Assembly (NCBI RefSeq): GCF_006345805.1
Contig: NC_043015.1
Location: 44,082,001 to 44,146,000 of the forward strand
DNA length: 64,000 nt
Source: Octopus sinensis
Lineage: Eukaryota
Direction of reading: 5' to 3'
A program made the position numbers and the translations under genes. The notes under the pieces are model-generated. The model was given only the letters and a program-made list of their open reading frames with translations. It was not told the origin of the DNA and searched no databases. Below, in pieces: positions 534-58,772 of this stretch; positions within the stretch are counted from its first letter, which is position 1, and each line of letters begins with the position of its first letter.

Positions 534-775
534 GAATTACAAATAATTAAAGCGGCGAACAATATACAATACAGTGTGTCATCCGGCTTTTTCGTAACTA
601 TGAAAACAAAATTAATTTTAGTATTTTGAAGGCGGTGAGTTGGTGGTAATCGTTATAGCGATACAGTGGCTGTTTCTGTCTTTTACGTTCTGAGTTCAAA
701 TCCGGTCGATGTCAACTCAACTTTGCTTTTCATCGACTCCAAGGACGACAAAATGTAGTACTGGTATCGATATAG

Positions 776-1158
776 GGAAGCACTCCGTCGGTTACGACGA
801 CGAGGGTTCCGGTTGATCCGATCAACGGAACAGCCTGCTCGTGAAATTAACGTGTAAGTGGCTGAGCACTCCACAGACACGTGTACCCTTAACGCAGTTC
901 TCGGGGATATTCAGCGTGACACAGAGAGTGACAAGGCCGGCCCTTTGAAATACAGGTACAACAGAAACAGGAAGTAAGAGTGAGAGAAAGTTGTGGTGAA
1001 AGAGTACAACAGGGATCACCACCATCTCCTGCCGGAGACTCGTGGAACTTTTAGGTGTTTTCGCTCAATAAACACTCACAACGCCCGGTCTGGGAATCGA
1101 AACCGCGATCCTACGACCGCGAGTGCGCTGCCCTAACCACTGGGCCATTGCGCCTCCA
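776..1158 (-). mobile_element. tRNA-derived SINE, family B (~380 bp; possibly octopus OR1-like)
   Basis: Head ggaggcgcaatggcccagtggttagggcagc...gtttcgattcc (A and B boxes); high identity to 25882-26264 and 55015-55395. Confidence 0.85.
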
Positions 1159-12230: not shown

Positions 12231-13115
12231 CTCCCTATTGTTTGACGTCACTCGTCTGTATGAATCTACAACATTAATCCATGAGGGTTATGATCTGCCA
12301 CAGGATAGATAACTCTGGACAAATAAAAAGACGTTAATTCAAAGAAGAATTAGAAGAAAATTTTATACAATACTCATGACGCCGTCTACATATTCTATCA
12401 TCTTGTAGATGCATATCAATTATACTCAGGAAAATCACTTATGGACACGAAGAATTGCACATCGCAATATCCTATCGAGAACGTCATTATGATAGGAGAT
12501 AGTTCGATATAAAACGTCCTGCTGTGTAGGAGAATTTTTTAAAGTAATACGAAGATTGGTTGGGGTATATATACGGGTTCTGCTTTATGCTTTTTGGGGC
12601 GGTGTTTGGTGGTGGTTAGAGCAAGAATAATATCTAAAAAGAAAAGACATGTCGTACGTTGGTACTGTTCGTTACGCAAATTTTGTGCTCCTAAGATATT
12701 TTTAGACCTGTTCAGAATCTGGCCACTGCGTGGTCATTTATAATGTATTACGATATTAATCCCTCGCCTTTGTAGCTTCCTGAGACAGAGAAGTTCATTT
12801 TTTCGTGGTATCTGACGTGAAAGCTCCCATCAGGATGGCGAATAGATATTACATTATAAATAACTGTTAGATGATCTTTTCTATTTCATAGTGGAGGCAC
12901 AAGGCCTAGTGGTTAGAGCAGCGGATTCGCGGTCGAGAGATCGCGGGTTTGAGTATGCATGTATGTATGTATGTATGTATGTATGTATGTATGTATGTAT
13001 GTATGTATGTATGTATGTATGTATGTATGTATGTATGTATGTATGTGTGTGTATTTGTGCGTGTGTATGTGCATTCAAAGATACACAGCAAATTGCAATC
13101 CATTATATATGTATG

Positions 13116-13180
<65 letters not shown>

Positions 13181-13609
13181 GTATATACATACATATATAC
13201 ATAAATACACATACACACATACACATACATAAACACATGCATATGTACATACATATGTGAGGGTATATATATGTGGAGTGTCAATGTCTAGAAAGGGCAG
13301 TGCGTTTACGTAAATTATTATGCAAAACAAAAAAACCCCTTCGTAACTCTGCCGTTTTAATTTCGTCATGACACGATTTATTGTTGAATGGGTGCGTTTG
13401 AAAAGTCGTAAGCAGTGCGCTTGAGTAGGAATTAGTGTTTTGTGCGCGCATCTCAACGGTTATATGTATGTACGTTGTTTGCGCATGCTTACTAAAACGT
13501 TTCCTCATGCAATAGAGCAAAAGAAAAAAAATAATAACCGTGACATTTATCATTCAATGCTTTGAATACATCGCGAGTTGTAAAAAGATTTAATATATTT
13601 GTACGTTAC

Positions 13610-13693
13610 CATTAGGTTTTGGCATTTTGGACATTGAAATTTCTGAGTCGGGTTCCATTCTTTGTTTCTCGTCTTCATCGTCACTGTCATCCT
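13610..13693 (-). CDS. Acidic cytoplasmic exon, copy B (identical duplicate)
   Basis: Same 84 nt and splice sites as 14905-14988; lies in the other unit of the tandem duplication. Confidence 0.7.
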
Positions 13694-14392
13694 CTATGTA
13701 AAATAAAAGAAAATTGTGAAAAATTGTGAAAATTGTGAAAAAATGTGAAAATTGTGAAAAAATGTGAAAATTGTGTAAAAATGTGAAAATTGTGAATTCA
13801 TTTCCACTTTTTAACGAATACATTATGCTAGTTTATTTTGAAATATAAGGAAATATTTATATATATCTCGTTTTTGAGAAATTAGGCTTCTCAAAACCAG
13901 AAAGCCGAAAGCTAGTTCGAAGACTACAGATCCAATCCGTCTTTACAATTGTAAAAATGTGTAAAACGTTAAGAGTTTATCATTTGTAAAAGTTTATCAT
14001 TTAAGTATATATGAGCATGTCTAGATATGCAACTATATGCATGAGAATATATACATAACACAAAACATACAAATCTGCACACATACATACATGTTTACGC
14101 ACATACATATATACGTACATACACACACATACATTCATAATAAATACATACATACACACATATATACATGGGTGGATGCATGCAGTTCCTGTGTACCAAA
14201 TTCATTCACAAGGCTTTGCTCGGATCGTCACTCGTTATAAATCATTTGTCCAAAGTGTCGTGCACTGGAACCCGTAACCATGTGGTAGTAAAGCGAGCTT
14301 CTTAACCTCACTGCAATATTTATGCCTTTTTATTTATAAGATGTGAACGATATATACGTAGCATCAACAAAAGCGCTTCTTCACTCATCGTA

Positions 14393-14435
<43 letters not shown>

Positions 14436-14904
14436 TATATATATATAATATATATATATATTATATATATACATATGTATATACATACATATATACATAA
14501 ATACACATACACACATACACATACATAAACACATGCATATGTACATACATATGTGAGGGTATATATATGTGTGAGTGTCAATGTCTAGAAAGGGCAGTGC
14601 GTTTACGTAAATTATTATGCAAAACAAAAACCCCTTCGTAACTCTGCCGTTTTAATTTCCTCATGACACGATTTATTGTTGAATGGGTGCGTTTGAAAAG
14701 TCGTAAGCAGTGCGCTTGAGTAGGAATTAGTGTTTTGTGCGCGCATCTCAACGGTTATATGTATGTACGTTTGTTTGCGCATGCTTACTAAAACGTTTCC
14801 TCATGCAATAGAGCAAAAAAAAAAAATAATAACCGTGACATTTATCATTCAATGCTTTGAATACATCGCGAGTTGTAAAAAGATTTAATATATTTGTACG
14901 TTAC

Positions 14905-14988
14905 CATTAGGTTTTGGCATTTTGGACATTGAAATTTCTGAGTCGGGTTCCATTCTTTGTTTCTCGTCTTCATCGTCACTGTCATCCT
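14905..14988 (-). CDS. Acidic cytoplasmic exon, copy A
   Basis: Acceptor ttttattttacatag and donor GTAACG; 84 nt, phase 1-1; (E)DDSDDEDEKQRMEPDSEISMSKMPKPN; in frame with the TM exon. Confidence 0.75.
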
Positions 14989-15659
14989 CTATGTAAAATA
15001 AAAGAAAATTGTGAAAAAATGTGAAAATTGTGTAAAAATGTGAAAATTGTGAATTCATTTCCACTTTTTAACGAATACATTATGCTAGTTTTATTTTGAA
15101 ATATAAGGAAATATTTATATATATCTCGTTTTTGAGAAATTAGGCTTCTCAAAACCAGAAAGCCGAAAGCTAGTTCGAAGACTACAGATCCAATCCGTCT
15201 TTACAATTGTAAAAATGTGTAAAACGTTAAGAGTTTATCATTTGTAAAAGTTTATCATTTAAGTATATATGAGCATGTCTAGATATGCAACTATATGCAT
15301 GAGAATATATACATAACACAAAACATACAAATCTGCACACATACATACATGTTTACGCACATACATATATACGTACATACACACACATACATTCATAATA
15401 AATACATACATACACACATATATACATGGGTGGATGCATGCAGTTCCTGTGTACCAAATTCATTCACAAGGCCTTGCTCGGATCGTCACTCGTTATAAAT
15501 CATTTGTCCAAAGTGTCGTGCACTGGAACCCGTAACCATGTGGTAGTAAAGCGAGCTTCTTAACCTCACTGCAATATTTATGCCTTTTTATTTATAAGAT
15601 GTGAACGATATATACGTAGCATCAACAAAAGCGCTTCTTCACTCATTCGTATATATATA

Positions 15660-15703
<44 letters not shown>

Positions 15704-16027
15704 TATATATAAACGGAATGATAAACATGTAATTAAAAAAATGGCAAAAAATGTGACAGAACCAGGTGGCTTCCTCTCTCTCTCTCGTCTTTCTCTCTTT
15801 TTCTTCTTCTTCTCCCTCCCTCTCCTCATTCTCTCCTCTTTTCATCACACACACACGCGCGCATGCTCAAAAGCACACAAACACTCCCAAGTACACGCCC
15901 ACCCCGCAATTTTGCTTTGTTTCCGGACGGTGTTTGATTTCACGTATTTCACACGCGCAGAAGCAAATGCATGTGTGTGCGTATGCATGAGTCTATGAAT
16001 GTACGTATAGTATGTATATATGTGAAT

Positions 16028-17205: not shown

Positions 17206-17310
17206 CTGAATACTGTTTCCGCCTTTGACACCAACAACAAAACCCTAATAATATCAATGCTGCAAGTAAACAGCCAGCGGTTATACCAGCAATTTCCTCG
17301 ACACCCAGTT
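17206..17310 (-). CDS. Transmembrane exon of the same gene
   Basis: Acceptor ttttgattttccag and donor GTAAGT; 105 nt, phase 1-1. Translation (E)LGVEEIAGITAGCLLAALILLGFCCWCQRRKQYS is a hydrophobic helix followed by a Cys cluster and a basic stop-transfer patch. Confidence 0.88.
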
Positions 17311-17841: not shown

Positions 17842-18935
17842 TGCTAGGTATTTAGTTTGCAGGCACATCATCTTGAGGTTTAGGGGCAGCAAGTCGCCTG
17901 AAATCCCATGAATCTTTCTCAGGATTCTTGCAGAATATAAGATAGTACTTTTCTGAAGGTCGAAAATACAAGTTTTAATTCCAATAATTTTTTTCACTCT
18001 TTTAGACAGCATTTTGGGTGTTGCGCTAAGTGCAGCTATTACTACAGAAATAATTGTTGTCTTGACCTTCCAAGGTCACCTTAGTTCTTTGGCTACATCT
18101 TCATATTTCTTAAGTCTTTCTGTTTGTTTGGTATTGACTATACAGACATAGAGAATTGTAAAATCTATGATCTTGCACTGTTTGTTTATTTCGTCTCTTT
18201 GATCATGTCTGGTCTTCTTGTATCTATAGTATGGTCAGTTTTAATGGTGTAGTCCTATAAGATCTTGTATTGGGTTGTCCGGAAATTTCGTGCCGATTTT
18301 TAAATGAACGAAAAAGGTCAAATACTTTCCATTACATTTTTAATCAACCAAATATGAACCATATTGTTGCACAATGCGTCTCCATCTTTCCTTTAACTTG
18401 AAAATACCCTCTTCCCAGAATTGAGGTAGTTTCATGGCAAATAATTCATCAAGGTATCTTTTTACGTCATCCAAGGAATTGAAATTTTTACCATTAAGTC
18501 TATTCTGCAGAGACTTGAATGAGCAGAAATCTGAAGGAGCAATATCTGGTGAATATGGAGGGTGGGGTAACACATCCCAGCCGAGCTGCAGCAATTTATG
18601 TATGATTCCCAAAACATCAAGTGCCGAAAATTAACTTTTTTATCTTCCATTTTAGAGGGTTACAGAATCAACACAGGTTATAGGAACATAAACCTTCTTC
18701 CACGAAAAGATAGCTTAAACTGTGCTCTAAATGGAGGTGTAGTCAAATCCTATTTTATGGACTCAACCATGTTCTAAAATAAGTCGAAATATAAGCTACT
18801 ATAAATCGGCACGAACTTTCCGGACAACCAAATAATTCTCATTACCTATCACAGCCTCTAATTTGTGCCCATGCCACTTTGCGCGGGCTATTTTAATGCA
18901 ACCACTCAAAATTTGATTGATACCTTCTTTTGCTA
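17842..18935 (-). mobile_element. 3' fragment of an R4/Dong-type RLE non-LTR retrotransposon, split by the mariner
   Basis: Removing the mariner restores ILSGC...KWHGHKLEAVIGNEN|YKIL*DYTIKTDHTIDTRRPDM...KIIDF...KKYEDVAKEL...LQKSTILYSARILRKI, followed by an (AAT)n tail. Confidence 0.85.
18270..18832 (-). mobile_element. Internally deleted mariner (563 bp, non-autonomous)
   Basis: 30-bp TIRs (ttgggttgtccggaaatttcgtgccgattt, 2 mismatches) and TA duplication at 18268-9 and 18833-4; transposase N-terminus MEDKKVNFRHLM fused to the C-terminus WDVLPHPPYSPDIAPSDF. Confidence 0.93.
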
Positions 18936-25345: not shown

Positions 25346-25881
25346 TGAACCAAAGATTCACCGCACCAAAGATCCAGCCATCCAATCGACCAATAAAACT
25401 AGTAATGCTCACCACTTGTACGTCGGAAGTACGTATATGGGGAGAACTCGTTTAGTGATCGCAAACGTTTGAACCAGACATAACTGGCAGAATCTCAAAA
25501 ACATTTAGCAAAAATATTTAGAACTTCCATCGGGGCGTCTCTCAATTACACTCGTGTGTATTAGGGAATAATACAAATTCGAAACAAGCATTTAACTAGC
25601 TCCGATGGGGTTTGCATTTTGCTGACATAAGGCCAATATGTGGTCAGCAGCAACGAGGGAATTAGTATTATCAAAACACAACAGCATTTATGGTAAGCAT
25701 CAGTAATTTGCGAAAGTTGATTGTTACAAATGGAAAACAAACACGAGCGGTATTGAATTGCGATATTGCAAAAAAGACGGCATTGAATTGCAACAGAAAA
25801 AAAGTAGTGGATGGAATTGCGAATGAGAGTTTTACAACACTTGTCGTGTGTTGCGTGTATACATATATACATACATATATT

Positions 25882-26264
25882 GGAAGCACTCCGTCGGTTA
25901 CGACGACGAGGGTTCCGGTTAATCCGATCAACGGAACAGCCTGCTCGTGAAATTAACGTGTAAGTGGCTGAGCACTCCACAGACACGTGTACCCTTAACG
26001 TAGTTCTCGGGGATATTCAGCGTGACACAGAGAGCGACAAGGCCGGCCCTTTGAAATACAGGTACAACAGAAACAGGAAGTAAGAGTGAGAGAAAGTTGT
26101 GGTGAAAGAGTACAGCAGGGATCACCATCATCCCCTGCCGGAGCCTTGTGGAGCTTTTAGGTGTTTTCGCTCAATAAACACTCACAACGACCGGTCTGGG
26201 AATCGAAACCACGACCCTACGACCGCGAGTCCGCTGCCCTAACCACTGGGCCATTGCGCCTCCA
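25882..26264 (-). mobile_element. tRNA-derived SINE, family B
   Basis: Full-length copy of 776-1158. Confidence 0.85.
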
Positions 26265-26446: not shown

Positions 26447-26671
26447 ACTCTTTACTCTTTTACTCTGTTACTTGTTTTCAGTCAGTTGACTGCGGCCATG
26501 CTGGAGCACCGCCTTCAGTCGAGCAACTTGACCCCGGGACTTATTCTTTGTAAGCCCAGTACTTATTCTATCGGTCTCTTTTGTCGAACCGCTAGGTGAC
26601 GGGGACATAAACACAGCAGCATCGGCCGTCAAGCAATGCCCGGGGAACAAACACGGATACACAAACATACA

Positions 26672-26717
<46 letters not shown>

Positions 26718-26878
26718 GACAGGCTTCTTTCAGTTTCCGTGTACCAAATCCACTCACAAGGCTTTGGTCGGCCCGAGGCTATAGTAGAAGACACTTGCTC
26801 AAGGTGCCACGCAGTAGGACTGAACCCGGAACCATGTGGTTGGTAAGCAATCTAATTACCACACAGCCACTCCTGCGC
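26447..26878 (-). mobile_element. Composite tRNA-derived SINE: family C head, internal (TA)/(TG)n, D tail ending (AAAGAGT)n
   Basis: Head ggagtggctgtgtggta at 26878-26715; tail ...ctccagcatggccgcagtca.ctgaaa.caagtaa..gagtaaaagagtaaagagta at 26660-26447. Confidence 0.8.
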
Positions 26879-35376: not shown

Positions 35377-35542
35377 AGGAGTGGCTGTGTGGTAAGTAGC
35401 TTGTTTACCAACCACATGGTTCCGGGTTCAGTCCTACTGCGTGGCACCTTGGGCAAGTGTCTTCTACTATAGCCTCGGGCCGACCATAGCCTTGCGAGTG
35501 GATTTGGTAGACGGAAACTGAAAGAAGCCCGTCGTATATATG

Positions 35543-35573
<31 letters not shown>

Positions 35574-35942
35574 ATGTGTGTGCGTGTATGTTTGTGTGGC
35601 TGTGTGGTAGGAAGCTTGATTCCCAACTACATGCTTTCACGTTCAGTCCCACTGTGAGGCATCTTGGGTGAATGTCTCCTACTATAATAAAGCCGTCTTA
35701 GTGAATTTGGTTGACGGTAACTGAAAGAAACCCATCGTGTGTGTGTATTTATAGCGGTCCGGTAAATGCGAGCGATGGAATCAGTACCAGTTTCAGTTTC
35801 TGTCTACCAAATCCACTCACAAGGCTTTGGTGTACCCGAGGCGATAGTAGAAGACACTTGCCCAAGGTGCCACGCTGTGGGACTGAACCAGGAGCCATGC
35901 GGTTGGTAAGCAAGCTACTTACCACACAGCCTCTCCTGCGCC
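35377..35942. mobile_element. Cluster of three family C SINE heads (35377-35537 +, 35596-35740 +, 35790-35942 -)
   Basis: Same head as 26715-26878; other copies at 58482-58593 (+), ~14195-14312 (-) and ~15455-15572 (-). Confidence 0.8.
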
Positions 35943-37150: not shown

Positions 37151-38256
37151 AGAAAGAAATATACACGTATATGAAACAAGTGTGCGCACGAAATATTACT
37201 CCGAGACGTAGACATCAAACTTTAAAAAAATTAAGTGTAAGTGAGGTAACATTGGACATATAACATATATTATGTTCCCGTTCTTGTTATTGTTTTTGAG
37301 CTCTAGTTAGTTCCAATTGTAAATTCCCTAGCTCATTGCTGGAAATATATTTTCCAATGCCTTGATTTATATTTTTCAAAGCGTTAGAATGTGATTAGGG
37401 AAGAATCTAGTTATTTTTACAAGAAGTTTGAACAACTGATTGAAAGTAGAAGTTATTTTGTTGGCTGGAGAAGTTTCATCGTTAACTCATCATGTATATA
37501 GTTCAGATAATTTCGAACACAAGTAGTGATGACCTGGCGAGAATGCATAAAATGAAGTTCCGTCTGTCATGAAATGTTTTCTTACACTAAATGCTCAAAT
37601 ACATTTGTCAATAGTTGTTATATAGATTTCACGGTCGAAACCATCGCGAATAGACCATTAAAACTATCGGCCATCAAATACTAATACTAATTGTGAGAGA
37701 TAGCAGGACTGTCTCAGGAAATAATATCTAATGATACTAAATAGTCTTTAACGGTTTTAGTAGGAAACTTGTCATTATTGAGTTTGTTTCATCCTTCGTG
37801 TGACGATAAAATATACTACCAGAGAAATACTAAAAGTTGATTAAATCGTCGAAATAAACGGTAGATTGGCAGAATCGTTAGAGAACCGAACAAAATAACC
37901 TGCCGGTAAAACTGCTATTCCAAGTTCCTAGAGAATATCTCTAGGCTATTTCCGTTAGTATGCAGTGACAATTTTCGCGGATTAGTGAACAAGTTAAATG
38001 TGAGCTGACAGTACTATCGTCATCAACGGCTGGCTTGTCTTTCCCGATAGAATCACGAAACGTACGTTTCGTTACATTCTGAGTTAAAAGGCCATTGATG
38101 TCAAAATTACATTTAACTTTTTCGGGGTCGAAAAGTACAATGGGCATTATATATTTTTATAACCCTACCTGAATGTCAATGAATTAAAAAGAAAACACAC
38201 CGTCTAAAATTTGTGGTCATGTGCTTTTTTTAAGAAAATATTATTTATTTACTTAC

Positions 38257-38323
38257 CGTCGACACCAAACTCTCGCGTAACCTCTACGACGCCATTATTG
38301 ACGGAACATTTGATAACTAGATC
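38257..38323 (-). pseudogene. Partial duplicate of the 3' end of the Ig exon, with its splice donor
   Basis: Matches ~38842-38920 with a 12-nt in-frame deletion and a few substitutions (DLVIKCSVNNGVVEVTREFGVD|GTAAGT); no credible acceptor. Confidence 0.8.
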
Positions 38324-38841
38324 TCTATATATATGTATATATATGTGTTTGTGTGTCTGTATTTGTCCCCCCAACATCCCCCCAACATCGATAGAATAAA
38401 TACTAGGTTTACAAAGAATATGTCCTGGGGTCGATTTGCTCGACTAAAGGCGTTGCTCCAGCATGGCTGCAGTCAAATGACTGAAACAAGTAAAAGAGTA
38501 AGAGTATTCATCAAATATAGTTTTTTGAAAACCTGAATACGGTTAAAGATATTCCACGCGTGACGACACCATCTTTCATTTTAAACATAGTATATTCATG
38601 ATTACCCTATTGATCTAATTTGTCCTGTCTTTGTCAAGACAGTACGCTAGATTTCGGTGAGATTTCGCTGACTATTTCTAGCAGACGGGACGACCACATG
38701 CAAGCCCCACTGTTGGCTCGACTGTCTTAATGCTCAATTCGTGTTTTCCTTTTTAAATTAATAATCAAACTTTTCAACCATTCAACGATGCTTGCATTGA
38801 TATCTACATACAGAGATAAAATTGAAAAGAAGAGCACTTAC

Positions 38842-39177
38842 CGTCGACACCAAACTCTCCCGTAACCTCCACGGTATTACCATCGACGCCATTATTGACG
38901 GAACATTTGATGACTAAATCGATATCAACTTTCGTTAATATATAATGAAGGGTACTGCTTCGATGATACTGACATGATGTTCTGTTAAGTCGTGGTTCCG
39001 TTTGGTTGATGTTTTCGCCACAGAGGCGAATCCAACCGCTGTCTTGACGTCGCTGACGATACCACGTGATGTTACCGGGTGGGTTTCCAACCATACCGCC
39101 GCATCGTATTTCTAATAAGACATCCGTGTGAGGCACTGTGTTGTTTATATTTTCCATCTTGAGAGGACCTGGTTTTG
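38842..39177 (-). CDS. Immunoglobulin-like (C2/I-set-like) domain exon
   Basis: Acceptor tctttctctcgtttcag and donor GTAAGT; 336 nt, phase 1-1. Translation AKPGPLKM...IRCGGMVGNPPGNITWY...SSTLHYILTKVDIDLVIKCSVNN...GEFGVD shows B-strand Cys, C-strand Trp, F-strand Cys, a second Cys pair and four N-x-T sequons. Confidence 0.9.
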
Positions 39178-43139: not shown

Positions 43140-44156
43140 ATGGCTATGAAGCGAACAGTTGGCTGTTCCTTCCTTCAAGATACACTCCCTCCGCAAACAC
43201 ACACACTCGTACAAACACCCCACTTCACGCCTTAAAAGGCAACAAAGATTCTCCTTCCGAACCGCAGAGCACGCGCTCGGTTCAAAGGAAATGCAAGCAG
43301 GACGTCGCGTTCGACGTAATTCTTGATTTTCCCCTCTGCCTTCACCCAATGCTTTGGTAAGGAAGGAGGAGGAAGAAAAAACAAATACAAAAATCATCAC
43401 AAACATTGACACGGAGATAAAAGAAAAAACTTCCAACAATTTTGCTTCTGCTGCGAAGCAAATTTCGGAGGAAGTTAAGATAACTCTAGAAGATGTGAAA
43501 AGAGCGAAGGAATTGTTAAGGAAGGATGGCAATGGTATCTTCCTCAATACTCCACAAGAGGTGATTGAAAGCACCAACAAGCAAACAATAATTTACAAAG
43601 TTTTCGACAGAAAACTAAAAAGAATAACAAATGCCACACCCCAACAGTTGGAGATAGCTCTAAAGCCCATTTGGGCCCAAAAGAGCTACGTAACCAAGGG
43701 GAAGCGTTTTGGAACCGTGGAGGTTCGCTTCCCAACAGAGGAGCTGGCAAGGGCGAACGCCATTTCGCCCTTGCAAACTGAGAATTTGTTACTAATTCCA
43801 ACCCACCTCGGGCGAAGAGTGACAAAAATAAAAATCGACCTCGTCCCCCTGACTAAATATGTCATGGCTGGTGGCAGCTGTCCTCTATGATATAGAGGAC
43901 ACTACCACCATTCTAGATGTCAGGAGAGTGAGGGCGAAAAACTGGTTGGGGATGGGAGTGCTGCTTCTTGCGCAAATTCAGCAAGAGAATATAAGTAAAA
44001 TCCCTGATTTCGTAAGTTTGCCGGACGGCACCAGGCTAAACGTTGCTGTGGAGGGGCGAAAGCCAAAATGTTTTCTCTGCAGCAGCGAAAGCCACTTAAA
44101 GAGGGACTGTCCCATTCACAAAAAGAGGATGGAGGCTTTCAGCAAGAGGCAGCAGC

Positions 44157-44187
<31 letters not shown>

Positions 44188-45006
44188 CAAGCAACAACAA
44201 CAGAAACAACAAAAACAGCAAGAAACACCAAAGGCTGCCACACCACCAACACCATCACCAACACCAGCACCAAGACGAGCAACACCACCCCTCCAACAAC
44301 AACAACCACCACCAACCAACACCGACAACCACCACCAAACCAACACCGACACCAGTACCTCGAAGGTCGACAGCAGCGACATCAACAGTAACAGGAGCAG
44401 CGGCACCACCGATACCGGTGGAACCAGAAAACTTTTCGTCCTGCTACTGAAGCAGACCCCTCAACCATTCCTTTGCCGGATGAAGAGATCTCGGATTGTG
44501 CGAGCTCTGATTCCAACAAAGGAGAATGGAACATAGTACCTCCAAAAAAGAAAAGGAGGAAAAACAAAAAGATTTACAGGGGAAGCACGAACAAACAGTA
44601 CTTCCCAACATCAACAACAACATCAACAACAACACACACTCACAACAACAACAACAACAACAACACTTTCGACACCACTACTGCCACTACCACAGACACA
44701 AACAAACACAGACACAATTACAGACACGATTACAGCAATGAATACAAAAACCCAAACTGGTTGAGTATTTGAAAAACAAAACAAGCACAAACATAACAGA
44801 TTTCATAATACCAACACACAAACACACCACCAGCACACATTCTCACAAAAATAAATGCAAAAACATTTGATGAAATAAAACAAATATTCCCTAACGATGT
44901 GGGATCGCTAGGGAAAAGTTTCTCGAAGAAACTTTATAAAAACATTATTGAAGCACCCGTGCAAAAGCACAAGGGAGCCACCCCCACCACCAACAACAGT
45001 AAGTAG
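43140..45006 (+). CDS. LINE ORF1 (RRM-like region, zinc knuckle, polyQ/PT-rich tail), frameshifted
   Basis: ORF pieces 43354-43890, 43859-44536 and 44473-44772; motif VEGRKPKCFLCSSESHLKRDCP (CX2CX4HX4C) and WNIVPPKKKRRK. Start and end approximate. Confidence 0.8.
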
Positions 45007-45042
45007 AGCCTTTTTTCTCCTTTTTTTCCCCTACTTTGAAAC

Positions 45043-48000
45043 ATGGCAAATCTTAGAATCGGTTGCTTGAATGTGAGAGGCCTCGGGTCACCTTGGAAAC
45101 AGGGTCACCTGTTAAACGACCTGAGGTTTCATGATGTGGATGTAGCAGCCATCAGTGAAACCAGGCTCTCCGACCCGCAGGAACTCGCAGCCCTTTTCGG
45201 CGGATACGAGATATTTCTATCTCCGTGTCGGCCGGGAGCGGGCGGTGGGTGGTACTGCGGTGTTGTTTCGGAAGGGCCTGGACCTGAAAATAAGGACAGT
45301 CTTCTTGGATCCGGAAGGTAAGTTGGTGGTCCTCGACGTGGACGGTAGTGACGGCGGTGCTTTCAGACTGCTGGCTGCCTACGCTCCGACAGGAGCAGGG
45401 CAGTCGGATTATTTCAAACGTCTGGAAGTTTTCCTGGGAACGTCACGCACTCTAGTACTAGTTGGGGATTGGAACGCTGTCTTAGACGAACGTTTCGATC
45501 GGGTGGGCAGGGGAGCGTCTGATAGGAGAGGGGGAGGGTGCAAGAGCCTCGCCAACCTACTCGGCCGCTTTCAGCTGTCCGACAGGTTTCGACTAGACAA
45601 CCCGAATGTGCCAATGTGGACTTGGACAAACCGCATCGGGTCGTCTAGATCGTACTTAGATAGAGTGTTTTGTAGGCCAGCGGATAAGGACAGCGTAGGG
45701 TGTCCACAATTCCACCTAGTCGAATATACGGACCACAAATTAGTGATCTGTACGGTCGACTTAGATAGGCTACATAGACAGGGACCCGGCTACTGGAAGC
45801 TGAACGCGTCGTTAACGGCGTGCAAAGCTTACAGAGACCGGATTAGTTTACTAGTTAAGCGGGCGCTCACGGGGGCAATCATCAACAACAACTGGTGGTT
45901 TGCCCTCAAGAGAGCAATTAGAGTAGAGTCGATTAGGTATAGTAAGACTCTAGCTATTGAACGTAGGAAGAGAGAGCGGGATTTAGTTAAGAAACTAGAC
46001 GAGGCTCTTGACACTGGCATCGCGACCGACGTGTTGGCGGCAAGGTTGGCCCTCGACCAACACTTCGACGCCAAACACGAAGGCTGCGTTGTCAGAGCTA
46101 AGGCACGTTCGCTAAGCGGGGAGGGGACTAGAGCCGCTCGATGGGCCCGCGTGGCGGAGGCGAAGCGAGGCAACAGAGCAACCATTCGGTCTTTGGTGGA
46201 CCAGAACGGGCGCGAGGTTACCAACCGAAGCAGATGTGTACGGTGCTTCAGCGGCACTTTGCTCAACTGTTTGGGACGAGCGGTGGAACGGACACCAACG
46301 GTACAGACTTCGGTGTGTACCTGGACGGACTGCCGCAACTCTCGGACAGCGAGGCAGAGTGCTGCGAAGGACCGATATCTCTGCCTGGGAAGTACAGGAA
46401 GCGATGAAGAGTTGCACGAGAGGTAGATCGCCGGGTTGGATGGTCTGCCCTACGAGCTTTACTTTTCAATGCCAGACTTGTTTGCGGACCTGTTGGCAAA
46501 CGTCTACTGCAACTGGCAGCAAAACGGGAGAATTCCTGCTTTTGTCTGTCGAGGGTGGTGGCTTTGCTAAAGAAGGACCCAAACAAGGGGGACGTTATAG
46601 GGAATTTCCGGCCCATCACTCTGCTCAATGCAGAGTTGAAGATTTTGGCCAAGGTGCTAGCCAAGAGATTGGCGCTTGTCGTGGACAAGCTGGTCGGCGG
46701 ACGCAGACATGCGCCGTGCCGACCAGGTCGATACACGACAACCTCCATCTCATGCGCTACATCATAGAGAGGGTGGGTAACGACGCTGGCGCGGGTGGGG
46801 CTTTGATCAACTTGGATCAGAGTAAAGCCTTCGATAGGGTCGACCATCGGTACCTGGCAGCTGTCCTCAGGCAGCCGGCTTCGGTCCAGTCTTCCGCGGG
46901 TGGATCGCTGCTTTATACAGCAACATCTGCTCGGTGATACGGGTGAACGGTCACCTTTCGGAACCGTTCGACATCTCGCGTTCGGTCCGCCAAGGATGCC
47001 CTCTCTCCTCCCTCTTGTACATTTTGACTCTCGAGCCATTACTGCGCAAGTTGGAGGCTTTGAGGGGCATCCCGCGCGATCTAGGAGGCGGAAACAGCGT
47101 GTCTGCTTATGCCGACGACGTCACCGTGGTGGTGTCGAGCCACAGGCACATTGGCCTGATTGGCGAGACGCTAAACCAGTACGAAGCGGTGACAGGGCAA
47201 AGATTAACGCGGAAAAGTCTGTGGGCTTGCAACTGGGCACCTGGAGAGGCAAGCCCATGCCGTCCAACAGCGTCGTAGGGCGCTGGACAGACGGACCCGT
47301 TAAACTGCTCGGGGTCTGGTTCGGTCCGGACCTCCAGGTGGATAAGAACTGGGAAGAGGTGACGAGCAGGGTGGCACGTCTCACCCAGAAATGGGCCGAG
47401 AGGAAGCTGTCCCTGAAAGGTCGAGCGGAGGTGGCGAATGCGTACATCGCATCCGTCATCTATTACCGCTTGACCGTCGTCCCTTGTCCCGACCGCTGGT
47501 TGGCCAAGCTGGTACGCCTGCTCTTCGACTTTTTGTGGAAGGGTCAGGTGCCACTGGTCAGGCGATCCATCTGCTGTCAACGACCGCTGAACGGAGGCCT
47601 TGGAATGCCGTGGTTGCTGTTGCGCAGACATGCGCTCAGGCTGCGGCATCTCAAGCGCTTCCTAGACGGTGAACAGGTGTGGTCGTCTTTTGTCAGACGC
47701 GATTTTCCGCAGCTCGTCTCTTTGACGGAGCTGCAGACCTGGATCAAACGTAGACCGAGAAAGGGCGCTTGGCACCTCGAGTGCCGTCAAGCCCTCTCCG
47801 CCCTCCACCAGGCGGGCAATGCGGTCGGTTACAGCTCCACTCTAGCGTTCTATAGAGGGTTAGTGGAGGAAAAATGCGACGACGTTCTCGGGGAAACTCT
47901 AGGCGTTGAAGACGACGAACTGAGCGGTCTGTTCGGGAGGACTTTCGGGCCGGGGCCGATGGATAATTTCCAGAGGTCTCTCGCCTGGCAGTGCTACCGA

Positions 48001-48474
48001 GGGGCTCTGCCTGTTCGAGATAAACTCTACCGGCACGGAAGTGCCGTCAGCCGGGCCTGCCCGAGGTGTTGCCAGGACGACGAAACCGTTCTGCACGCAC
48101 TCGTCCAGTGCCCGAGTATTGCTGAAATATGGGTTTATGTCGAACAGCTACTGTCACGTGTAGGACGGATCCGACTATCGGCCGAATCCATAGTGAAGAT
48201 TGCCCCGCCGACCTCCTTTAACAAGGAGGGCGAGGCCGTTTTCTTGTGCCTTGTGGCTGTGGCGAAAGAAGTCGTGTGGTGGACTCGTTTGAAAGGGCTA
48301 AAGTCAGACACTTTCCTCTTTGGTCAAGGCCTCATCAACTTTTTCAAGTTTCACTTGAAAAGGAAGATGAGGTTAGAGAGGAAAGTGCTGTCCGATAGCA
48401 AGTTTTATGAAAGGTGGGTGAATTGTGCGAGACTGGCCTGTATAAATGGACCAGTTCTCAGGTTTCGCCTGTGA
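45043..48474 (+). CDS. LINE ORF2 (apurinic-like endonuclease, reverse transcriptase, CCHC), about 8 frameshifts
   Basis: LNVRGL, ISETRL, GDWNAV, SYLDRVF, TDHK (APE); FRPITLLN, DQSKAFDRV, RQGCPLS, YADDV (RT); CPRCCQDDETVLHALVQC. Confidence 0.93.
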
Positions 48475-48796
48475 TTTCAAAGAAAAAGGTAATGTAAAAG
48501 GAGAAGAAGGGGACTCTCTACACCCCTTTTTTTGACCAGGCTCCCGTTGGCTTTTGTAGGGTTTTTTCCACCGGAACTTTCGAGACGTCTCCCATTTTGG
48601 GAGTTTTTCATTGTTGAATTTTATAAGTTTTTATAAGATTTTTACTCGATGTTTTTAAAAAACGGCAAAACCCTTTGTAACCTTTCGTCTCTGTCTTGTC
48701 CCTTTATGTAATCATGCGTGTTAGCCCTTGTGGCCAATAAAAAAGAATTGATTATTATTATTATTATTATTATTATTTATTATTATCATTATTATT

Positions 48797-52568: not shown

Positions 52569-55014
52569 GGTATAATTTCTGAAGAGTAGCAGGAGGGGTT
52601 GGTTTATGCACTAAGTACGAACGGTCGGTTTGCAATTTGGAACCTGGTCAAGCAAGATCATGGTGTACAGCAGTGCCTGTTGTTAGACCTCAGCCCGGTT
52701 AATCTGCAGGTGATCTAGTTCGAACCAGATCATGGCGTAAAAATAATCATGGGTAAAAGTCACGTGTAGGATGATCTGGGAGTAATTCTGAGCATCAAAT
52801 ATATCAGACAAAGTAGCATGCCTTAGAAGACTTTCAGGTCGGTGATTATTTGGCCGATTTCCAAAGTGTCTTTGCTTAGCAATTCTGCAGAGGAAGGAAA
52901 TATCCCCCTGTACGTGATAATTCCTACAAACATGAACATGCTAGAGCCGCCAGATATCAAACTTTTCCGAGATGTGCCTTGGTGATTTATATGGCGATAC
53001 TGTTCTCTATGAAACCGATCAATATCCGTACGCTTGTTGATTTCTGGGGATATGTCTAACAGCCTCTATTATGTGCAGCGCAAATCGGCCTGTTAGTCAA
53101 GTCCGTCAAGATCGAACGTCGACATTTTTTCCTATGGAAAACCAGATAGTTATCCTATGGTTAGTGTTTGTACGAAGGTTGCCGTGCGGTTGAGGCGGTC
53201 GAATGACATAGCTTTCACCCCTCAGATCGATCCCTCATTAGTTTCTTGAAGGGCCACTTAAAGAGGAATGTGACACTGGATAGGGATATGTCGCTCTTCA
53301 GTGAATATTCTAAAACCGGATAGGGAATACTCTTACTCTTTTTACCCTTTTACTTGTTTCAGTCATTTGACTGCGGCCATGCTAGAGCACCACCTTTAGT
53401 CGAGCAAATCGACCCCAGGACTTCTTTGGAAGCCTAGTACTTATTATGTCGGTCTCTTTTACCGAACCGCTAAGTTACAGGGAATGGTAAAACTAGCTCC
53501 TGGAAATGGGACCACATTAACTGTGCGGCTGTTAGCTGCCTGGTAACAATGTCTGAAAAATGTTCTCGAGTTTCCTGCAGTGGAATAAATTGCGCATATT
53601 TGTAGGATGAACTGCATCACTGAATATGATTACCGAACCTCATTTTGGTGGTTAATTTCTTGTTCTTAATTTGTTTTTGTATATTGTTAATGCTATGGAA
53701 ATGTTATCAATTCGCGGAAATGTTTTGCGCTCACTCCTGTTCCTGTTATGCGACGTAATTCCCTATTATATTTTTACTGCTTCTTGGGCTTTTTCGGTTA
53801 ATAAAAGAATCATTATTTTTGTTATTAAAAAGACAATTGTATGACAAATTTTATAAAGATACGTTAGCAAATTCCAAATAGCAAAATTTATACATCACAA
53901 CATTATTTATTATTTTTTTTCACGTTTGGATATTAAATCTCAATGGAGCTTGCTTTAATTTTTTTTAACAATTTCGGCGAGAAGCGAGCGTAAACATCAG
54001 AGCATTGGATAAAAAAAACAAATCCTTTCTGTATATTATATATCCCGGTTTCTTTTGAGCTTAAACCCAGCTTAGGTCAACTTTGCCTTTCATTCTTTAG
54101 GTGTTAGTATACAAAATAGCAGTCAAGACCGGCAGAGTGATGCAATCGTTAGCGTGTTAATAAAATGCCGACGAGTATTTTTTTTTCTGGCTCTTTGCAT
54201 TCTGAGTTCAAATCTCACCGCTTCCCGGATTACCACGACCTTAACCCCTAGGGTGCTTTTTGTGGTGCAAAATGTAATGCAAGAATTCGGGTAGGATTCC
54301 CGGCCTGGTTAGAAGATGAGTTAGAACAAATTTCGGAGACCTCAACAAGCATAATGGGGAGGGGGGTGTGATGTTCTTCATTTTGTTAAGCGATAAAAAA
54401 CATACCAGTCATTTATACAGATCAATCAACTGACTATTACATTATTCAATAATTTGTGGCTCTGTGCCAATGTATGGAATCAATAACGCTACTGTTGTTA
54501 TGTTTGTTTATATTTTGAAGAGGAGAATTAGCAGTGACTACCAAAAAAAATCGAAGCTTCATTGCTCTAATCAAATAAACAGACGTGTAACAGTTTAAAG
54601 TGCACCGAATTGTTTTCAGGACAGGAGATGCATCGATTTATAATTAGTCTAACATAGTTGCATATGCGACATCATATATAGCAAATGCTGCTTAGCTGAT
54701 GCGCTCCTTTCATCAACTACCGTCTAATTAGAATGGAGAGTAGCATACAACCGCCCTGTATATGTTTATTTATATAATAACCAACAAAATGTCTGCCTCT
54801 CTATCCATTTCCACCTCTCAGTTCATCTAACTGTGTTATTAACATATTTACAATTTTTCTATATGCTTCTCTGACTACATCCCTGTCCATACCTCTATGT
54901 GTCTGTGCATCTCATGTTTTACTCTATCGTCAGTTTAACCCATGTATCTGTCAATATGGTAAGTGGAATGTATATTTATTATTAGAAATATTAAATTTCT
55001 AAATATCTCATTTT

Positions 55015-55395
55015 GGAAGCACTCCGTCGGTTACGACGACGAGTGTTCCGGTTGATCCGATCAACGGAACAACCTGCTCGTGAAATTAACGTGCAAGTGG
55101 CTGAGCACTCCACAGACACGTGTACCCTTAACGTAGTTCTCGGGGATATTCAGCGTGACACAGAGAGTGACAAGGCCGGCCCTTTGAAATACAGGTACAA
55201 CAGAAACAGGAAGTAAGAGTGAGAGAAAGTTGTGGTGAAAGAGTACAGCAGGGATCACCACCATCCCTGCCGGAGCCTCGTGGAGCTTTAGATATTTTCG
55301 CTCAATAAACACTCACAACGCCCGGTCTGGGAATCGAAACCGCGATCCTATGACCGCGAGTCCATGTCCTAACCACTGGGCCATTGGGCCTCCAC
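55015..55395 (-). mobile_element. tRNA-derived SINE, family B, with 11-bp TSD
   Basis: TSD aaatatctcat at 55001-55011 and 55396-55406; a related empty site is at ~61805-61830. Confidence 0.88.
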
Positions 55396-56234: not shown

Positions 56235-56524
56235 ATAGTAAATGAATGTATTTAGTTTGTTCGGTAGATTCGCAGCGAGATAGGGCTTGCAGACGATCTG
56301 TGTTAACGATGGTTGTTGACAACTCTGTTCGGATCGAATTCAGGAATGATGGATGCCAACATTTCACGATTTTTGTGGCCATTGTGGCTTAACCGCGAGC
56401 GTTAAGAGGGGGTCGTCCTCAAGCGCTATCTCGCACAGAATCTGCCAAAGAATCAAAACACGTACCCTAAATATGTGCGATCGATAATATTTACACCGCT
56501 AGCGCTTCTTTAATTCACCATTGA

Positions 56525-56794
56525 ATATGAATATTCATATATATTATATATATATATATAATATTATATATATATATATACTATATATACATACATATAT
56601 ATATATATACATATATACATATATATACATATATATAATATTATATACATATATATACATACATATATACACTATATATATATACATATATATATACTTA
56701 TATATATATATATATATATACAATATATATATATATATAATATATACATATTATAATATATATACATATATATATATATAAACTATATATATAC

Positions 56795-56825
<31 letters not shown>

Positions 56826-56830
56826 CAATA

Positions 56831-56870
<40 letters not shown>

Positions 56871-56912
56871 CATTAATATATACATATATATATATATATA
56901 TATAATACAATA

Positions 56913-56952
<40 letters not shown>

Positions 56953-57040
56953 CATTATATATATAATATATATATACCTATATATATATAAAAATTACAT
57001 AATATTATATATATATACATTATATATATACATATATAAC

Positions 57041-57085
<45 letters not shown>

Positions 57086-57091
57086 TAATAC

Positions 57092-57147
<56 letters not shown>

Positions 57148-57233
57148 TACTATATATACATACATATATATACATTATATATACATATATATATATATAT
57201 ACATACATACATCTATACATACATATACAATAT

Positions 57234-57268
<35 letters not shown>

Positions 57269-57507
57269 CATACATATATATACATACATATACATATATA
57301 TTATATATATATATATATATCATACCTACATATATATACATACATATACATATATATATATATATATATACATACATACATATATATACATACTATATAT
57401 ACATATACATCATATATATACATATATATATACATACATATATATACATAATATATACATATTTATACATACATATATATACATATATATATACATACAT
57501 TATATAC

Positions 57508-57541
<34 letters not shown>

Positions 57542-57622
57542 TATATATACATATATACATATATATACACATACATATATATACATATATATATACATAC
57601 ATATATATACATATATATATAC

Positions 57623-57657
<35 letters not shown>

Positions 57658-57689
57658 CATATATATATACATATATTACATATATATAC

Positions 57690-57744
<55 letters not shown>

Positions 57745-57827
57745 TACATATATATACATACATATATACCATATATATATACATATATATATAATATATA
57801 CATACATACATATATATACATACATAC

Positions 57828-57868
<41 letters not shown>

Positions 57869-57887
57869 CATACATATATATACATAC

Positions 57888-57924
<37 letters not shown>

Positions 57925-57965
57925 CTACATATATATACATACATATACAATATATATATATATAT

Positions 57966-57996
<31 letters not shown>

Positions 57997-58010
57997 AATA
58001 TATATACGTA
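56525..58010. repeat. ~1.5-kb compound (TA)n/(TACA)n microsatellite
   Basis: Directly visible. Confidence 0.95.
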
Positions 58011-58772
58011 CTCATACGTGTGTGTGTATGTGTGTGTGTTTGTGTGGATATGTGTACATCTGTTTTCTTATCTGTGTATTTAGTTTCCTCCCCCCAACTT
58101 CCTCGAGCCTTTCCATGCATCGTTAACGATCGCGTGTTTATTCATTCATAACAAACACAGCATAAGTACTCCATCATTAATTATAATCGCTCCGCCAACC
58201 GTGAACATGAACACCGTGAAAATTACGCAAATGAAATTTTATCAGGCATTAATTTTGTTTACATTGTTTACATTTTCAATAACTGGACACTCACCCTTTC
58301 TGTTACTTTATCCTGGCATCTTAAGAAAAAAACGTACGATCGTATACTGATGCATTGATTGCTTGAAGCATTATCTTACGCAGCTCACAGCTGCCCATAT
58401 GCCTAATTTCACAGCAAGGCTAAATACGTACGGATGTTCGATAATATCGTATGATAAAGCATATTACATATATGGAGTGGCTGTTTTGTAAAAGGTTTGT
58501 TTTCAACCATATGGTTCCGGGTTTAATCCCATTGAGTGGCGCTATTACCTCGGGCCGACCAAAATCCTGTGAGTGGATTTGGTAGACGGAAAACTTTCAA
58601 CTAGTTACGGTCAAACAACTGACAAACAACTGGTACCGAGCAGAATATTTGCTGTAGCCCATCTTTTATAACAAGATAAATCAATGTACATGATAACACT
58701 TCCAATCAGTTAAGATCAGAAGCCATGAGAACCATGCCTGGTACCTCATCAGGGCAATTATCATCATCATCA

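What the first reader, a model, noticed from the sequence alone, without database searches (positions are those of the whole stretch)
13176..15651. Recent tandem duplication creates two copies of a frame-preserving cytoplasmic exon
Both units contain the identical 84-nt phase 1-1 exon with intact splice sites. Including 0, 1 or 2 copies keeps the frame and changes the dose of an acidic, Ser-containing motif (DDSDDEDE resembles a CK2-type site) in the receptor tail. Breakpoints are in (TA)n, suggesting microsatellite-mediated unequal exchange. Caveat: near-identity is equally compatible with an uncollapsed second haplotype.
Basis: partly seen in the sequence, partly recalled or inferred. Interest (0 to 1): 0.7.

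Follow-up and report, generated by a model that had tools for sequence, protein, structure and literature searches.

The report
Tandem duplicated exon in octopus gene
A 1.3-kb stretch of an octopus cell-surface receptor gene, holding one small coding exon, appears twice in a row between three TA microsatellites; this is a very young exon duplication or an assembly error, and either is an ordinary event.

Summary
Two head-to-tail units (13166-14392 and 14462-15651, period about 1296 bp) differ by 2 substitutions, 7 indels of 1-2 bp and one 38-bp VNTR step. (TA)~30 tracts sit at the left end, the junction and the right end.

Each unit carries the same 84-nt phase 1-1 exon on the minus strand (13610-13693 and 14905-14988) with identical splice sites. 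The exon is real. It belongs to Octopus sinensis LOC115222062, an uncharacterised C2-set Ig, single-pass membrane protein. It encodes the juxtamembrane acidic stretch (E)DDSDDEDEKQRMEP..., whose core [ST]DDEDEK is kept in Argonauta and in transcripts of another octopod.

Every product on record has exactly one copy: the RefSeq model, the Argonauta model, and the relative's transcripts in about 25 RNA-seq runs. No 0-copy or 2-copy form was found.

The best reading is a very recent, possibly polymorphic duplication by unequal exchange between the flanking (TA)n tracts (about 0.6). The main rival is a false exon gain in a PacBio-era assembly with raised BUSCO duplication (about 0.3). Reads were not available, so I could not decide between them. 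Regulated dosing of a CK2-type motif is untested. Interest is low: a new example of a well-known kind.

The parts
13116..13175 (.). Left (TA)~30 microsatellite; left breakpoint of the duplication lies in it
   Evidence: TRF and regex scan. Homology between the units starts inside this tract. Sequence to its left (13078-13103) has no counterpart before unit B.
13166..14392 (.). Duplication unit A (1227 bp)
   Evidence: Aligned to unit B with 1184 identities, 2 substitutions and 8 indels.
14400..14461 (.). Junction (TA)n tract between the units. It is a hybrid: its left part resembles the right-hand tract (shared TAATATATATATATA phase shift) and its right part runs into the CATATGTATATAC start of a unit.
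   Evidence: read directly from the sequence.
14462..15651 (.). Duplication unit B (1190 bp)
15650..15711 (.). Right (TA)~30 microsatellite; right breakpoint
   Evidence: Unique sequence resumes at 15712 (AAACGGAATG...).
13610..13693 (-). 84-nt exon, copy A (the downstream copy in the transcript); encodes (E)DDSDDEDEKQRMEPDSEISMSKMPKPN, phase 1-1
   Evidence: Acceptor acatAG at 13695-13694 and donor GT at 13609-13608. The translation matches residues 141-168 of XP_029648025.2; tblastn itself aligned residues 150-168 at 100%.
14905..14988 (-). 84-nt exon, copy B (the upstream copy in the transcript), identical to copy A
   Evidence: The block 14819-15003 is identical to 13524-13708.
13709..13796 (.). 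19-bp VNTR (GAAAATTGTGAAAAAATGT), 4.6 copies, starting 16 nt upstream (in transcript sense) of the copy-A acceptor, in the branch-point and polypyrimidine region
   Evidence: TRF; minus-strand read.
15004..15053 (.). The same VNTR before copy B, only 2.6 copies. This is the only difference between the copies within 100 nt of the exon.
14117..14314 (.). Fragment of a dispersed (SINE-like) repeat inside unit A. The same fragment sits at 15375-15572 in unit B, so the duplication happened after this insertion.
   Evidence: BLAST of unit A against the window hits 26665-26771, 35794-35829 and 35384-35432 at 76-89%.
17206..17310 (-). Transmembrane and stop-transfer exon (ELGVEEIAGITAGCLLAALILLGFCCWCQRRKQYS), phase 1-1; its donor CAG|GTAAGT feeds the duplicated exon
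38842..39177 (-). C2-set immunoglobulin exon of the same gene (336 nt, phase 1-1)
   Evidence: Pfam C2-set_2 scores 23.8 bits against a cut-off of 21.

Best explanation
What it is. The window is part of Octopus sinensis gene LOC115222062 on the minus strand. The gene encodes an uncharacterised type I membrane protein: a V-set Ig domain (seen in relatives), a C2-set Ig domain, a transmembrane helix and a cytoplasmic tail of about 65 aa.

What happened. In the ancestral state a single 84-nt, phase 1-1 exon encoded the acidic juxtamembrane stretch. It lay in a segment of about 1.23 kb bracketed by two (TA)~30 microsatellites. Misaligned exchange between the right tract of one chromatid and the left tract of the other copied the bracketed segment in tandem. 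This could have been unequal crossing-over or sister-chromatid exchange, or replication template switching. The result is (TA)n - unit - hybrid (TA)n - unit - (TA)n. The event is very recent: substitution divergence is 0.17%, and an old SINE-like fragment and the intronic VNTR were copied along with the exon. It may still be polymorphic.

Expected consequence. Both exon copies keep identical splice signals and are separated by a normal 1211-nt intron. Nothing in the sequence enforces mutually exclusive use. Transcripts from a duplicated allele should therefore carry two copies, adding 28 aa and a second acidic S-x-x-E cluster, or skip one copy at random. All outcomes stay in frame. No function of the duplication itself needs to be assumed; it is most likely a neutral, nascent structural variant.

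Shown versus inferred. Shown: the repeat, its borders, the exon's reality and conservation, the phases, and that only one-copy products are on record. Inferred: the exchange mechanism, the young age, and the splicing outcome.
For: - Near-identical tandem units, catalogued difference by difference, and the only such repeat in the window.
- All three borders lie in (TA)n tracts of 60-62 bp. Chance for both ends of a random segment is about 0.2%. The junction tract is a hybrid of the outer two.
- There are no N bases anywhere in the window. Ko et al. report that false duplications are most often separated by a gap (PMC9516828).
- 2 substitutions in 1186 aligned bp is about 7-fold below the 1.22% heterozygosity reported for the sister species O. 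vulgaris (PMC10700109). Most other differences are 1-2-bp indels, a pattern I would expect from residual long-read errors in a region short reads cannot polish uniquely.
- The exon is real. It matches XP_029648025.2 at 100%. It is present in Argonauta hians GAB1605342.1 and in spliced transcripts of another octopod (L002-L005). The core [ST]DDEDEK.RM.P is conserved.
- Phase 1-1 fits the neighbouring Ig and transmembrane exons.
- An older, decayed partial exon copy next to a TA-type tract at 38251-38344 shows that this locus has made local duplications before.
- Tandem exon duplication is common, in about 10% of animal genes (PMC9013439).
Against: - No reads, second assembly or orthologous DNA could be examined, so the duplication is seen in one assembly only.
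- That assembly (PacBio CLR + Illumina + Hi-C) has 5.2% duplicated BUSCOs against 0.4-0.5% in other octopus assemblies, a sign of residual haplotypic duplication.
- If every indel is counted as real, the copies differ at about 0.8% of positions, which is within the allelic range.
- The RefSeq protein found here has one copy of the exon, and a two-copy query found no two-copy product. If the duplication were fixed and both copies were spliced in by default, a two-copy model would be expected.
- A closed (filled) gap cannot be recognised from the sequence.
Confidence: 0.6

Rival explanations
1. Assembly artefact (false exon gain). The two units are the two haplotypes of a single-copy segment, or one segment laid down twice during gap closing or polishing. 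They were placed in series because overlap alignment failed in the flanking (TA)n tracts. The animal would then have one exon copy.
For: - Near-identity with a mix of SNPs, small indels, a VNTR step and different microsatellite lengths is what two alleles would look like.
- The O. sinensis assembly has 5.2% duplicated BUSCOs against 0.5% in O. vulgaris (PMC10700109).
- False exon gains within genes are a documented class of assembly error (PMC9516828).
- Every protein or transcript on record has one copy.
Against: - There is no gap (no N) between the copies or anywhere in the 64 kb, whereas false duplications are most often separated by gaps.
- From general knowledge of long-read assembly: the whole 2.6-kb structure is shorter than typical PacBio reads, so single reads should span and define it.
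- Substitution divergence of 0.17% is well below the 1.22% heterozygosity of the sister species.
- No other near-identical tandem repeat exists in the window.
Confidence: 0.3
2. Regulated dosing. The duplication is real, and cells produce 0-, 1- and 2-copy isoforms in a controlled way to tune the number of CK2-phosphorylated acidic clusters in the receptor tail, and so its sorting or signalling.
For: - All three forms are in frame.
- The exon's donor (ATG|GTAACG) is weaker than the GTAAGT donors of its neighbours, as is common for cassette exons.
- The VNTR in the branch-point region differs between the copies, 4.6 against 2.6 units, so the two acceptors could behave differently.
- The acidic S/T core is conserved.
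Against: - No 0-copy or 2-copy product is on record.
- The copies are too young (0.17%) for any regulation specific to the duplication to have evolved.
- The relative's transcripts in about 25 RNA-seq runs always carry the exon once.
- CK2 phosphorylation is inferred from a sequence pattern only.
Confidence: 0.12
3. An old tandem exon duplication kept identical by gene conversion, as part of a long-standing two-exon arrangement in octopods.
For: Tandem exon duplicates are often ancient (PMC9741552 abstract), and gene conversion can homogenise tandem copies.
Against: - Identity extends evenly over the whole 1.2-kb unit, including intronic VNTR, microsatellite-like sequence and a SINE-like fragment.
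- The unit stops exactly at the (TA)n tracts.
- The Argonauta model and a second octopod's transcripts encode one copy.
Confidence: 0.03

Closest known systems
Tandem exon duplication in animal genes (Kondrashov & Koonin 2001 and Letunic et al. 2002, from my own knowledge; Ivanov & Pervouchine 2022, PMC9013439)
   Same: There are two adjacent homologous exons of equal length and phase in one gene, each with its own splice sites, produced by a local genomic duplication of more than 1 kb.
   Different: Known functional cases are mostly old, diverged and spliced in a mutually exclusive way to give alternative protein segments. Here the exons are 100% identical, so choosing one or the other changes nothing. 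Only copy number could matter, and nothing enforces exclusivity (84 nt is a multiple of 3, and the intron between the copies is 1211 nt).
False exon gain from duplication errors in genome assemblies (Ko et al. 2022, PMC9516828)
   Same: A near-identical adjacent copy of an exon-bearing segment lies inside a gene, in a long-read plus Hi-C assembly of a heterozygous animal with raised BUSCO duplication.
   Different: There is no assembly gap between the copies, the borders coincide with microsatellites rather than contig ends, and substitution divergence is below the expected heterozygosity. Read depth, the defining criterion, could not be tested.
Repeat-mediated unequal exchange giving intragenic duplications (for example Alu-Alu exon duplications in human genes; from my own knowledge)
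   Same: Direct repeats that flank a segment serve as the misalignment substrate, and the product is repeat - unit - hybrid repeat - unit - repeat.
   Different: The substrate is a 60-bp (TA)n microsatellite rather than a 300-bp interspersed repeat. Replication slippage or template switching is as likely as meiotic recombination.
CK2-phosphorylated acidic-cluster sorting motifs in tails of type I membrane proteins (for example furin and the cation-independent mannose-6-phosphate receptor; from my own knowledge)
   Same: A Ser/Thr is embedded in a run of Asp/Glu (S-D-D-E fits S-x-x-[DE]) close to the membrane in a short cytoplasmic tail, and it is conserved as S or T across species.
   Different: This is a resemblance in sequence pattern only. 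There is no homology to those proteins, and no phosphorylation or trafficking data.
Two-domain (V + C2) Ig-superfamily adhesion-type receptors (nectin/PVR, CAR, ALCAM, BCAM)
   Same: The protein has a Pfam C2-set_2 domain and a V-like domain in relatives. It is single-pass and has phase 1-1 exons. It gives weak PDB matches to VEGFR2 Ig domains, CD166, Lutheran and PVR.
   Different: There is no specific orthology. The matches are generic Ig similarity (E 1e-11 to 1e-2). The family seems confined to cephalopods in the databases searched: 15 hits at E<=1e-3 among 1.8 billion representatives.

Membership tests
Tandem exon duplication | Two adjacent exons of one gene that are homologous to each other | tested here: met
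   13610-13693 and 14905-14988 are 100% identical. Both lie between the transmembrane exon and the off-window last exon of LOC115222062.
Tandem exon duplication | Same length and intron phase, with intact splice sites on both copies | tested here: met
   Both are 84 nt and phase 1-1, with AG acceptors and GT donors in identical context.
Tandem exon duplication | Both copies are present in the organism's genome, not only in the assembly | not testable with these tools
   No reads or second assembly were reachable. The JGI metagenome scan found nothing, the Argonauta locus was too long to fetch, and the ENA contig stops short of the exon.
Mutually exclusive exon pair | Exactly one of the two exons appears in mature transcripts | tested here: inconclusive
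   Only one-copy proteins are on record, but no transcript data from an animal known to carry the duplication were available.
Mutually exclusive exon pair | A mechanism that forbids joint inclusion (frameshift leading to NMD, or an intron too short to splice) | tested here: not met
   84 nt is a multiple of 3, so double inclusion stays in frame. The intron between the copies is 1211 nt (13694-14904), well above steric limits. Competing RNA structures and U2/U12 splice-site incompatibility were not examined.
False exon gain (assembly duplication error) | An assembly gap or unsupported join between the copies | tested here: not met
   The window has no N bases. A filled gap cannot be excluded.
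False exon gain (assembly duplication error) | Haploid-level read depth and haplotype-specific k-mers over each copy | not testable with these tools
   No read data were available.
Ig-superfamily type I membrane receptor | An Ig domain above Pfam threshold plus a single transmembrane helix | tested here: met
   C2-set_2 scores 23.8 bits (cut-off 21) in P0001 and 28.0 bits in the Argonauta ortholog. The hydrophobic stretch IAGITAGCLLAALILLGFCCW is followed by QRRK. A signal peptide and V-like domain are seen in P0005. V-set in Argonauta scores 21.8 bits, below its cut-off of 26.
CK2-type acidic-cluster motif | S/T with an acidic residue at +3 (S-x-x-[DE]) in an acidic run, conserved across species | tested here: met
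   The motif reads DDSDDEDE in O. sinensis, EESDDEDE in Argonauta, DDSDDEDE in P0005 and DDTDDEDE in P0020.
CK2-type acidic-cluster motif | Actual phosphorylation by CK2 and an effect on sorting or signalling | not testable with these tools
   This needs experiments.

The most novel reading that the evidence does not exclude
The duplication is real and still segregating in O. sinensis. Carriers would make a receptor with two identical 28-aa acidic modules, alongside one-copy transcripts from stochastic skipping. That would be a tandem exon duplication caught at birth, before any divergence. One could then watch directly how the spliceosome treats two indistinguishable exons, and whether alternative splicing arises immediately on duplication.
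Probability: 0.2. Interest if true: 0.45.

Novelty: new member of a known kind. Interest (0 to 1): 0.22.

Why it matters
If real, this is a clean natural example of the first step of exon duplication: identical copies, known breakpoints and a simple microsatellite mechanism, in an animal group with very repeat-rich genomes. It could be used to test whether alternative splicing appears at once when an exon is duplicated.

If it is an artefact, it is a caution for annotating and comparing the O. sinensis reference, because false exon gains inflate apparent exon and isoform novelty.

Either way, the biological weight is small. The gene is uncharacterised and the event is of a common kind.

Tried and rejected
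- Two-copy or zero-copy products: a protein search with an artificial two-copy tail returned only the one-copy RefSeq protein. The first search and the 1.8-billion-representative search also gave only one-copy forms.
- Orthologous DNA, ENA contig: the ENA contig with a 73%-identical Ig exon (L001) has neither the transmembrane exon nor the acidic exon within its 10-kb flank.
- Orthologous DNA, Argonauta: the Argonauta hians gene spans 101 kb, so no DNA was returned.
- Orthologous DNA, O. sinensis: its own gene is not in the gene-position index.
- Orthologous DNA, metagenomes: a degenerate-pattern scan of JGI metagenome contigs for DDEDEKQRMEP found nothing.
- Other explanations for the unit: there are no tRNA or Rfam hits in 11-18 kb, and + strand ORFs there are low-complexity microsatellite translations. 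The unit is not a transposable element copy; only a 200-bp old SINE-like fragment inside it recurs elsewhere.
- Literature: no paper mentions LOC115222062.
- Other exons of the gene: the V-set exon, the last coding exon and the relative's alternative 3' exon are all absent from the window.
- Mutually exclusive splicing as an enforced mechanism was considered and rejected: the frame is preserved and the intron between the copies is long.
Full report
**Observation**

The region 13.1-15.7 kb contains two head-to-tail copies of a unit of about 1.2 kb.
- A global alignment of 13166-14392 against 14462-15651 gives 1184 identical positions.
- The differences are 2 substitutions (13365 G/14660 C; 14215 T/15473 C), seven 1-2-bp indels and one 38-bp indel.
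- The 38-bp indel equals two units of a 19-bp VNTR.
- The start-to-start period is 1295-1297 bp before the VNTR and 1258 bp after it.
- In a self-comparison of the whole window, this is the only long repeat of 97% identity or more. All other repeats are dispersed elements at 74-96%.
- The window contains no N.

**Borders**

(TA)>=6 tracts of 60, 62 and 62 bp lie at 13116-13175, 14400-14461 and 15650-15711. These are the left end, the junction and the right end.
- Sequence left of the first tract and right of the last has no counterpart at the junction, so the breakpoints lie inside the tracts.
- Such tracts cover 4.3% of the window, so both ends of an arbitrary segment would fall in them about 0.2% of the time.
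- The junction tract shares the TAATATATATATATA phase shift with the right-hand tract and then continues into the start of a unit. This is what a hybrid tract formed by misaligned exchange would look like. An end-to-end misjoin of two haplotypes would give the same picture.

**The gene**

On the minus strand the window holds three phase 1-1 exons with canonical splice sites.

| Exon | Coordinates | Length | Splice context |
|---|---|---|---|
| C2-set Ig | 38842-39177 | 336 nt | donor ACG\|GTAAGT |
| Transmembrane | 17206-17310 | 105 nt | donor CAG\|GTAAGT |
| Acidic, copy B | 14905-14988 | 84 nt | acatAG\|AGGATG...AATG\|GTAACG |
| Acidic, copy A | 13610-13693 | 84 nt | same as copy B |

- A protein search with the conceptual splice product found XP_029648025.2, 'uncharacterized protein LOC115222062 isoform X2' of Octopus sinensis. 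It is 205 aa and 100% identical over the Ig, transmembrane and acidic exons.
- That model contains the acidic exon once and continues with DDKYSMYMNTRAASNQSRFGTSQYPGVASIQLGYAHL. This last exon is not in the window.
- Pfam places the Ig exon in C2-set_2, the CD80-like family.
- The Argonauta hians ortholog (301 aa) and a transcript-derived relative (P0005, 319 aa) add a signal peptide and a V-like domain.
- PDB matches are generic Ig similarity to VEGFR2, CD166, Lutheran and PVR.
- The family is tiny in the databases: 15 hits at E<=1e-3 among 1.8 billion representatives.

**The exon is real and conserved, and single-copy everywhere else**

| Source | Exon product |
|---|---|
| O. sinensis | EDDSDDEDEKQRMEPDSEISMSKMPKPN |
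| Argonauta hians | DEESDDEDEKQRMEPETDIQMSQVSKAN |
| P0005 (another octopod) | DDDSDDEDEKERMGPDVEAHQSHQSKRN |
| P0020 (Tara Oceans metatranscriptome member) | DDDTDDEDEKERMGPDVEAQPHHSKR (sequence ends here) |

- The core [ST]DDEDEK.RM.P is invariant. The S/T keeps an acidic residue at +3, which fits the CK2 consensus S-x-x-[DE] (consensus from my own knowledge).
- By my own count, the exon is 61% identical between O. sinensis and Argonauta. The transmembrane exon is about 91%, the Ig exon 89% and the last exon 94%. So its C-terminal half is the least constrained coding part of the gene.
- P0005 is encoded on spliced contigs of about 2.26 kb from about 25 RNA-seq runs (L002-L005). Those examined carry one copy of the exon, joined to a different 3' terminal exon.
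- A query built with two copies retrieved only the one-copy RefSeq protein.

**Frame claims**
- The transmembrane exon ends TCA G| and the acidic exon begins |AG GAT, giving GAG (E). It ends AAT G|.
- Joined to a second copy, the junction again gives GAG. Joined to the last exon, it gives GAT (D), as in the RefSeq protein.
- Skipping both copies gives S-D-DKY.
- All three forms are in frame. The 1-copy and 2-copy cases are shown directly. The 0-copy case is inferred from the protein, because the last exon is off-window.

**Splicing expectations (inference)**
- The two copies are identical over the exon, 86 nt of the downstream intron and 15 nt of the upstream intron.
- The only nearby difference is the VNTR, which begins 16 nt upstream of the acceptor. 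On the transcript strand it reads ACATTTTTTCACAATTTTC, rich in pyrimidines with TTCAC branch-like sites. Copy A has 4.6 units before it and copy B has 2.6.
- The intron between the copies is 1211 nt. Nothing enforces exclusivity.
- The donor GTAACG departs from the consensus at +5 and +6, unlike the GTAAGT donors of the neighbouring exons. The exon may therefore be skippable.
- The default expectation for a duplicated allele is inclusion of both copies, with some single-copy product.

**Real or artefact**

For a real duplication:
- There is no gap. Ko et al. found that false duplications are most often separated by gaps or unsupported joins (PMC9516828).
- From general knowledge, the structure is shorter than typical long reads, so single reads should span it.
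- The borders are in microsatellites.
- 2 substitutions in 1186 bp (0.17%) compares with 1.22% heterozygosity in the sister species O. vulgaris (PMC10700109).
- The excess of 1-bp indels looks to me like unpolished long-read error in a region where short reads map ambiguously.

For an artefact:
- The O. sinensis assembly (PacBio + Illumina + Hi-C; PMC12564688) has 5.2% duplicated BUSCOs against 0.4-0.5% in other octopus assemblies.
- 'False exon gain' is a recognised error class.
- If all indels are real, the copies differ at about 0.8% of positions, which is allele-like.
- The RefSeq model has one copy.

I weigh this at about 0.6 real, 0.3 artefact and the remainder other. An old duplication homogenised by gene conversion is unlikely. 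The identity is uniform across intronic VNTR, microsatellite-like sequence and a SINE-like fragment, and relatives encode one copy.

**Age (inference)**

O. sinensis and O. vulgaris split about 2.5 Mya. A 0.17% difference between copies is far less than expected for that span. If real, the duplication should be absent from O. vulgaris and may be polymorphic within O. sinensis.

**Comparison with what is known**
- This is a tandem exon duplication, a kind found in about 10% of animal genes and often linked to mutually exclusive splicing (PMC9013439).
- It differs from the studied functional cases in being undiverged, so only copy number could matter.
- The functional reading, tuning the number of acidic CK2-type clusters, is possible but untested. 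No tool available here could test it.

**Verdict**

This is a new member of a known kind, and interest is low (0.22).

Noticed in passing
window 38251-38344 (-): An 85-bp, 82%-identical partial copy of the 3' end of the C2-Ig exon lies about 590 bp downstream of the real exon and abuts a TA-type tract. It includes the exon's GTAAGT donor and has a 12-bp deletion. This is an older, decayed local duplication in the same gene.
   Followed up: partly
window 43300-48500 (+): A GC-rich (up to 58%) LINE-like retrotransposon sits in the intron upstream of the Ig exon. It has ORFs matching Exo_endo_phos (45146-46423) and zf-RVT (46807-48471). A second zf-RVT remnant lies at 59267-59533 (-).
   Followed up: partly
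window 770-1158, 25875-26264, 55010-55394: Three copies of a dispersed repeat of about 390 bp, 95-96% identical to one another. This looks like a young SINE-like family.
   Followed up: no
window 56500-58100: About 1.6 kb of almost pure TA/TATAC-type microsatellite (GC 17.5% over 56-58 kb). The window as a whole is very rich in microsatellites.
   Followed up: no
L002-L005 (Logan SRR27666088, SRR27666072, SRR27666076, SRR27666061), about 1769-1886: Spliced transcripts of a related octopod carry the acidic exon once. They end in a different terminal exon (GRLSWDEMRL*) from the DDKYSMYMN...LGYAHL tail of O. sinensis and Argonauta, which suggests alternative 3' exons in this gene family.
   Followed up: partly
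P0001 residues 169-205 (last exon, outside the window): The well-conserved last exon contains YMNT (a YxN-type motif) and a C-terminal LGYAHL that fits the ITIM-like pattern [ILV]xYxx[ILV]. These were seen by eye only, but they hint at phosphotyrosine signalling in this orphan receptor.
   Followed up: no
window 18343-18630 (-): A 96-aa ORF contains ...HPPYSPDIAPSDF..., which looks to me like a mariner/Tc1 transposase remnant. It had no Pfam hit at E<=0.01.
   Followed up: partly
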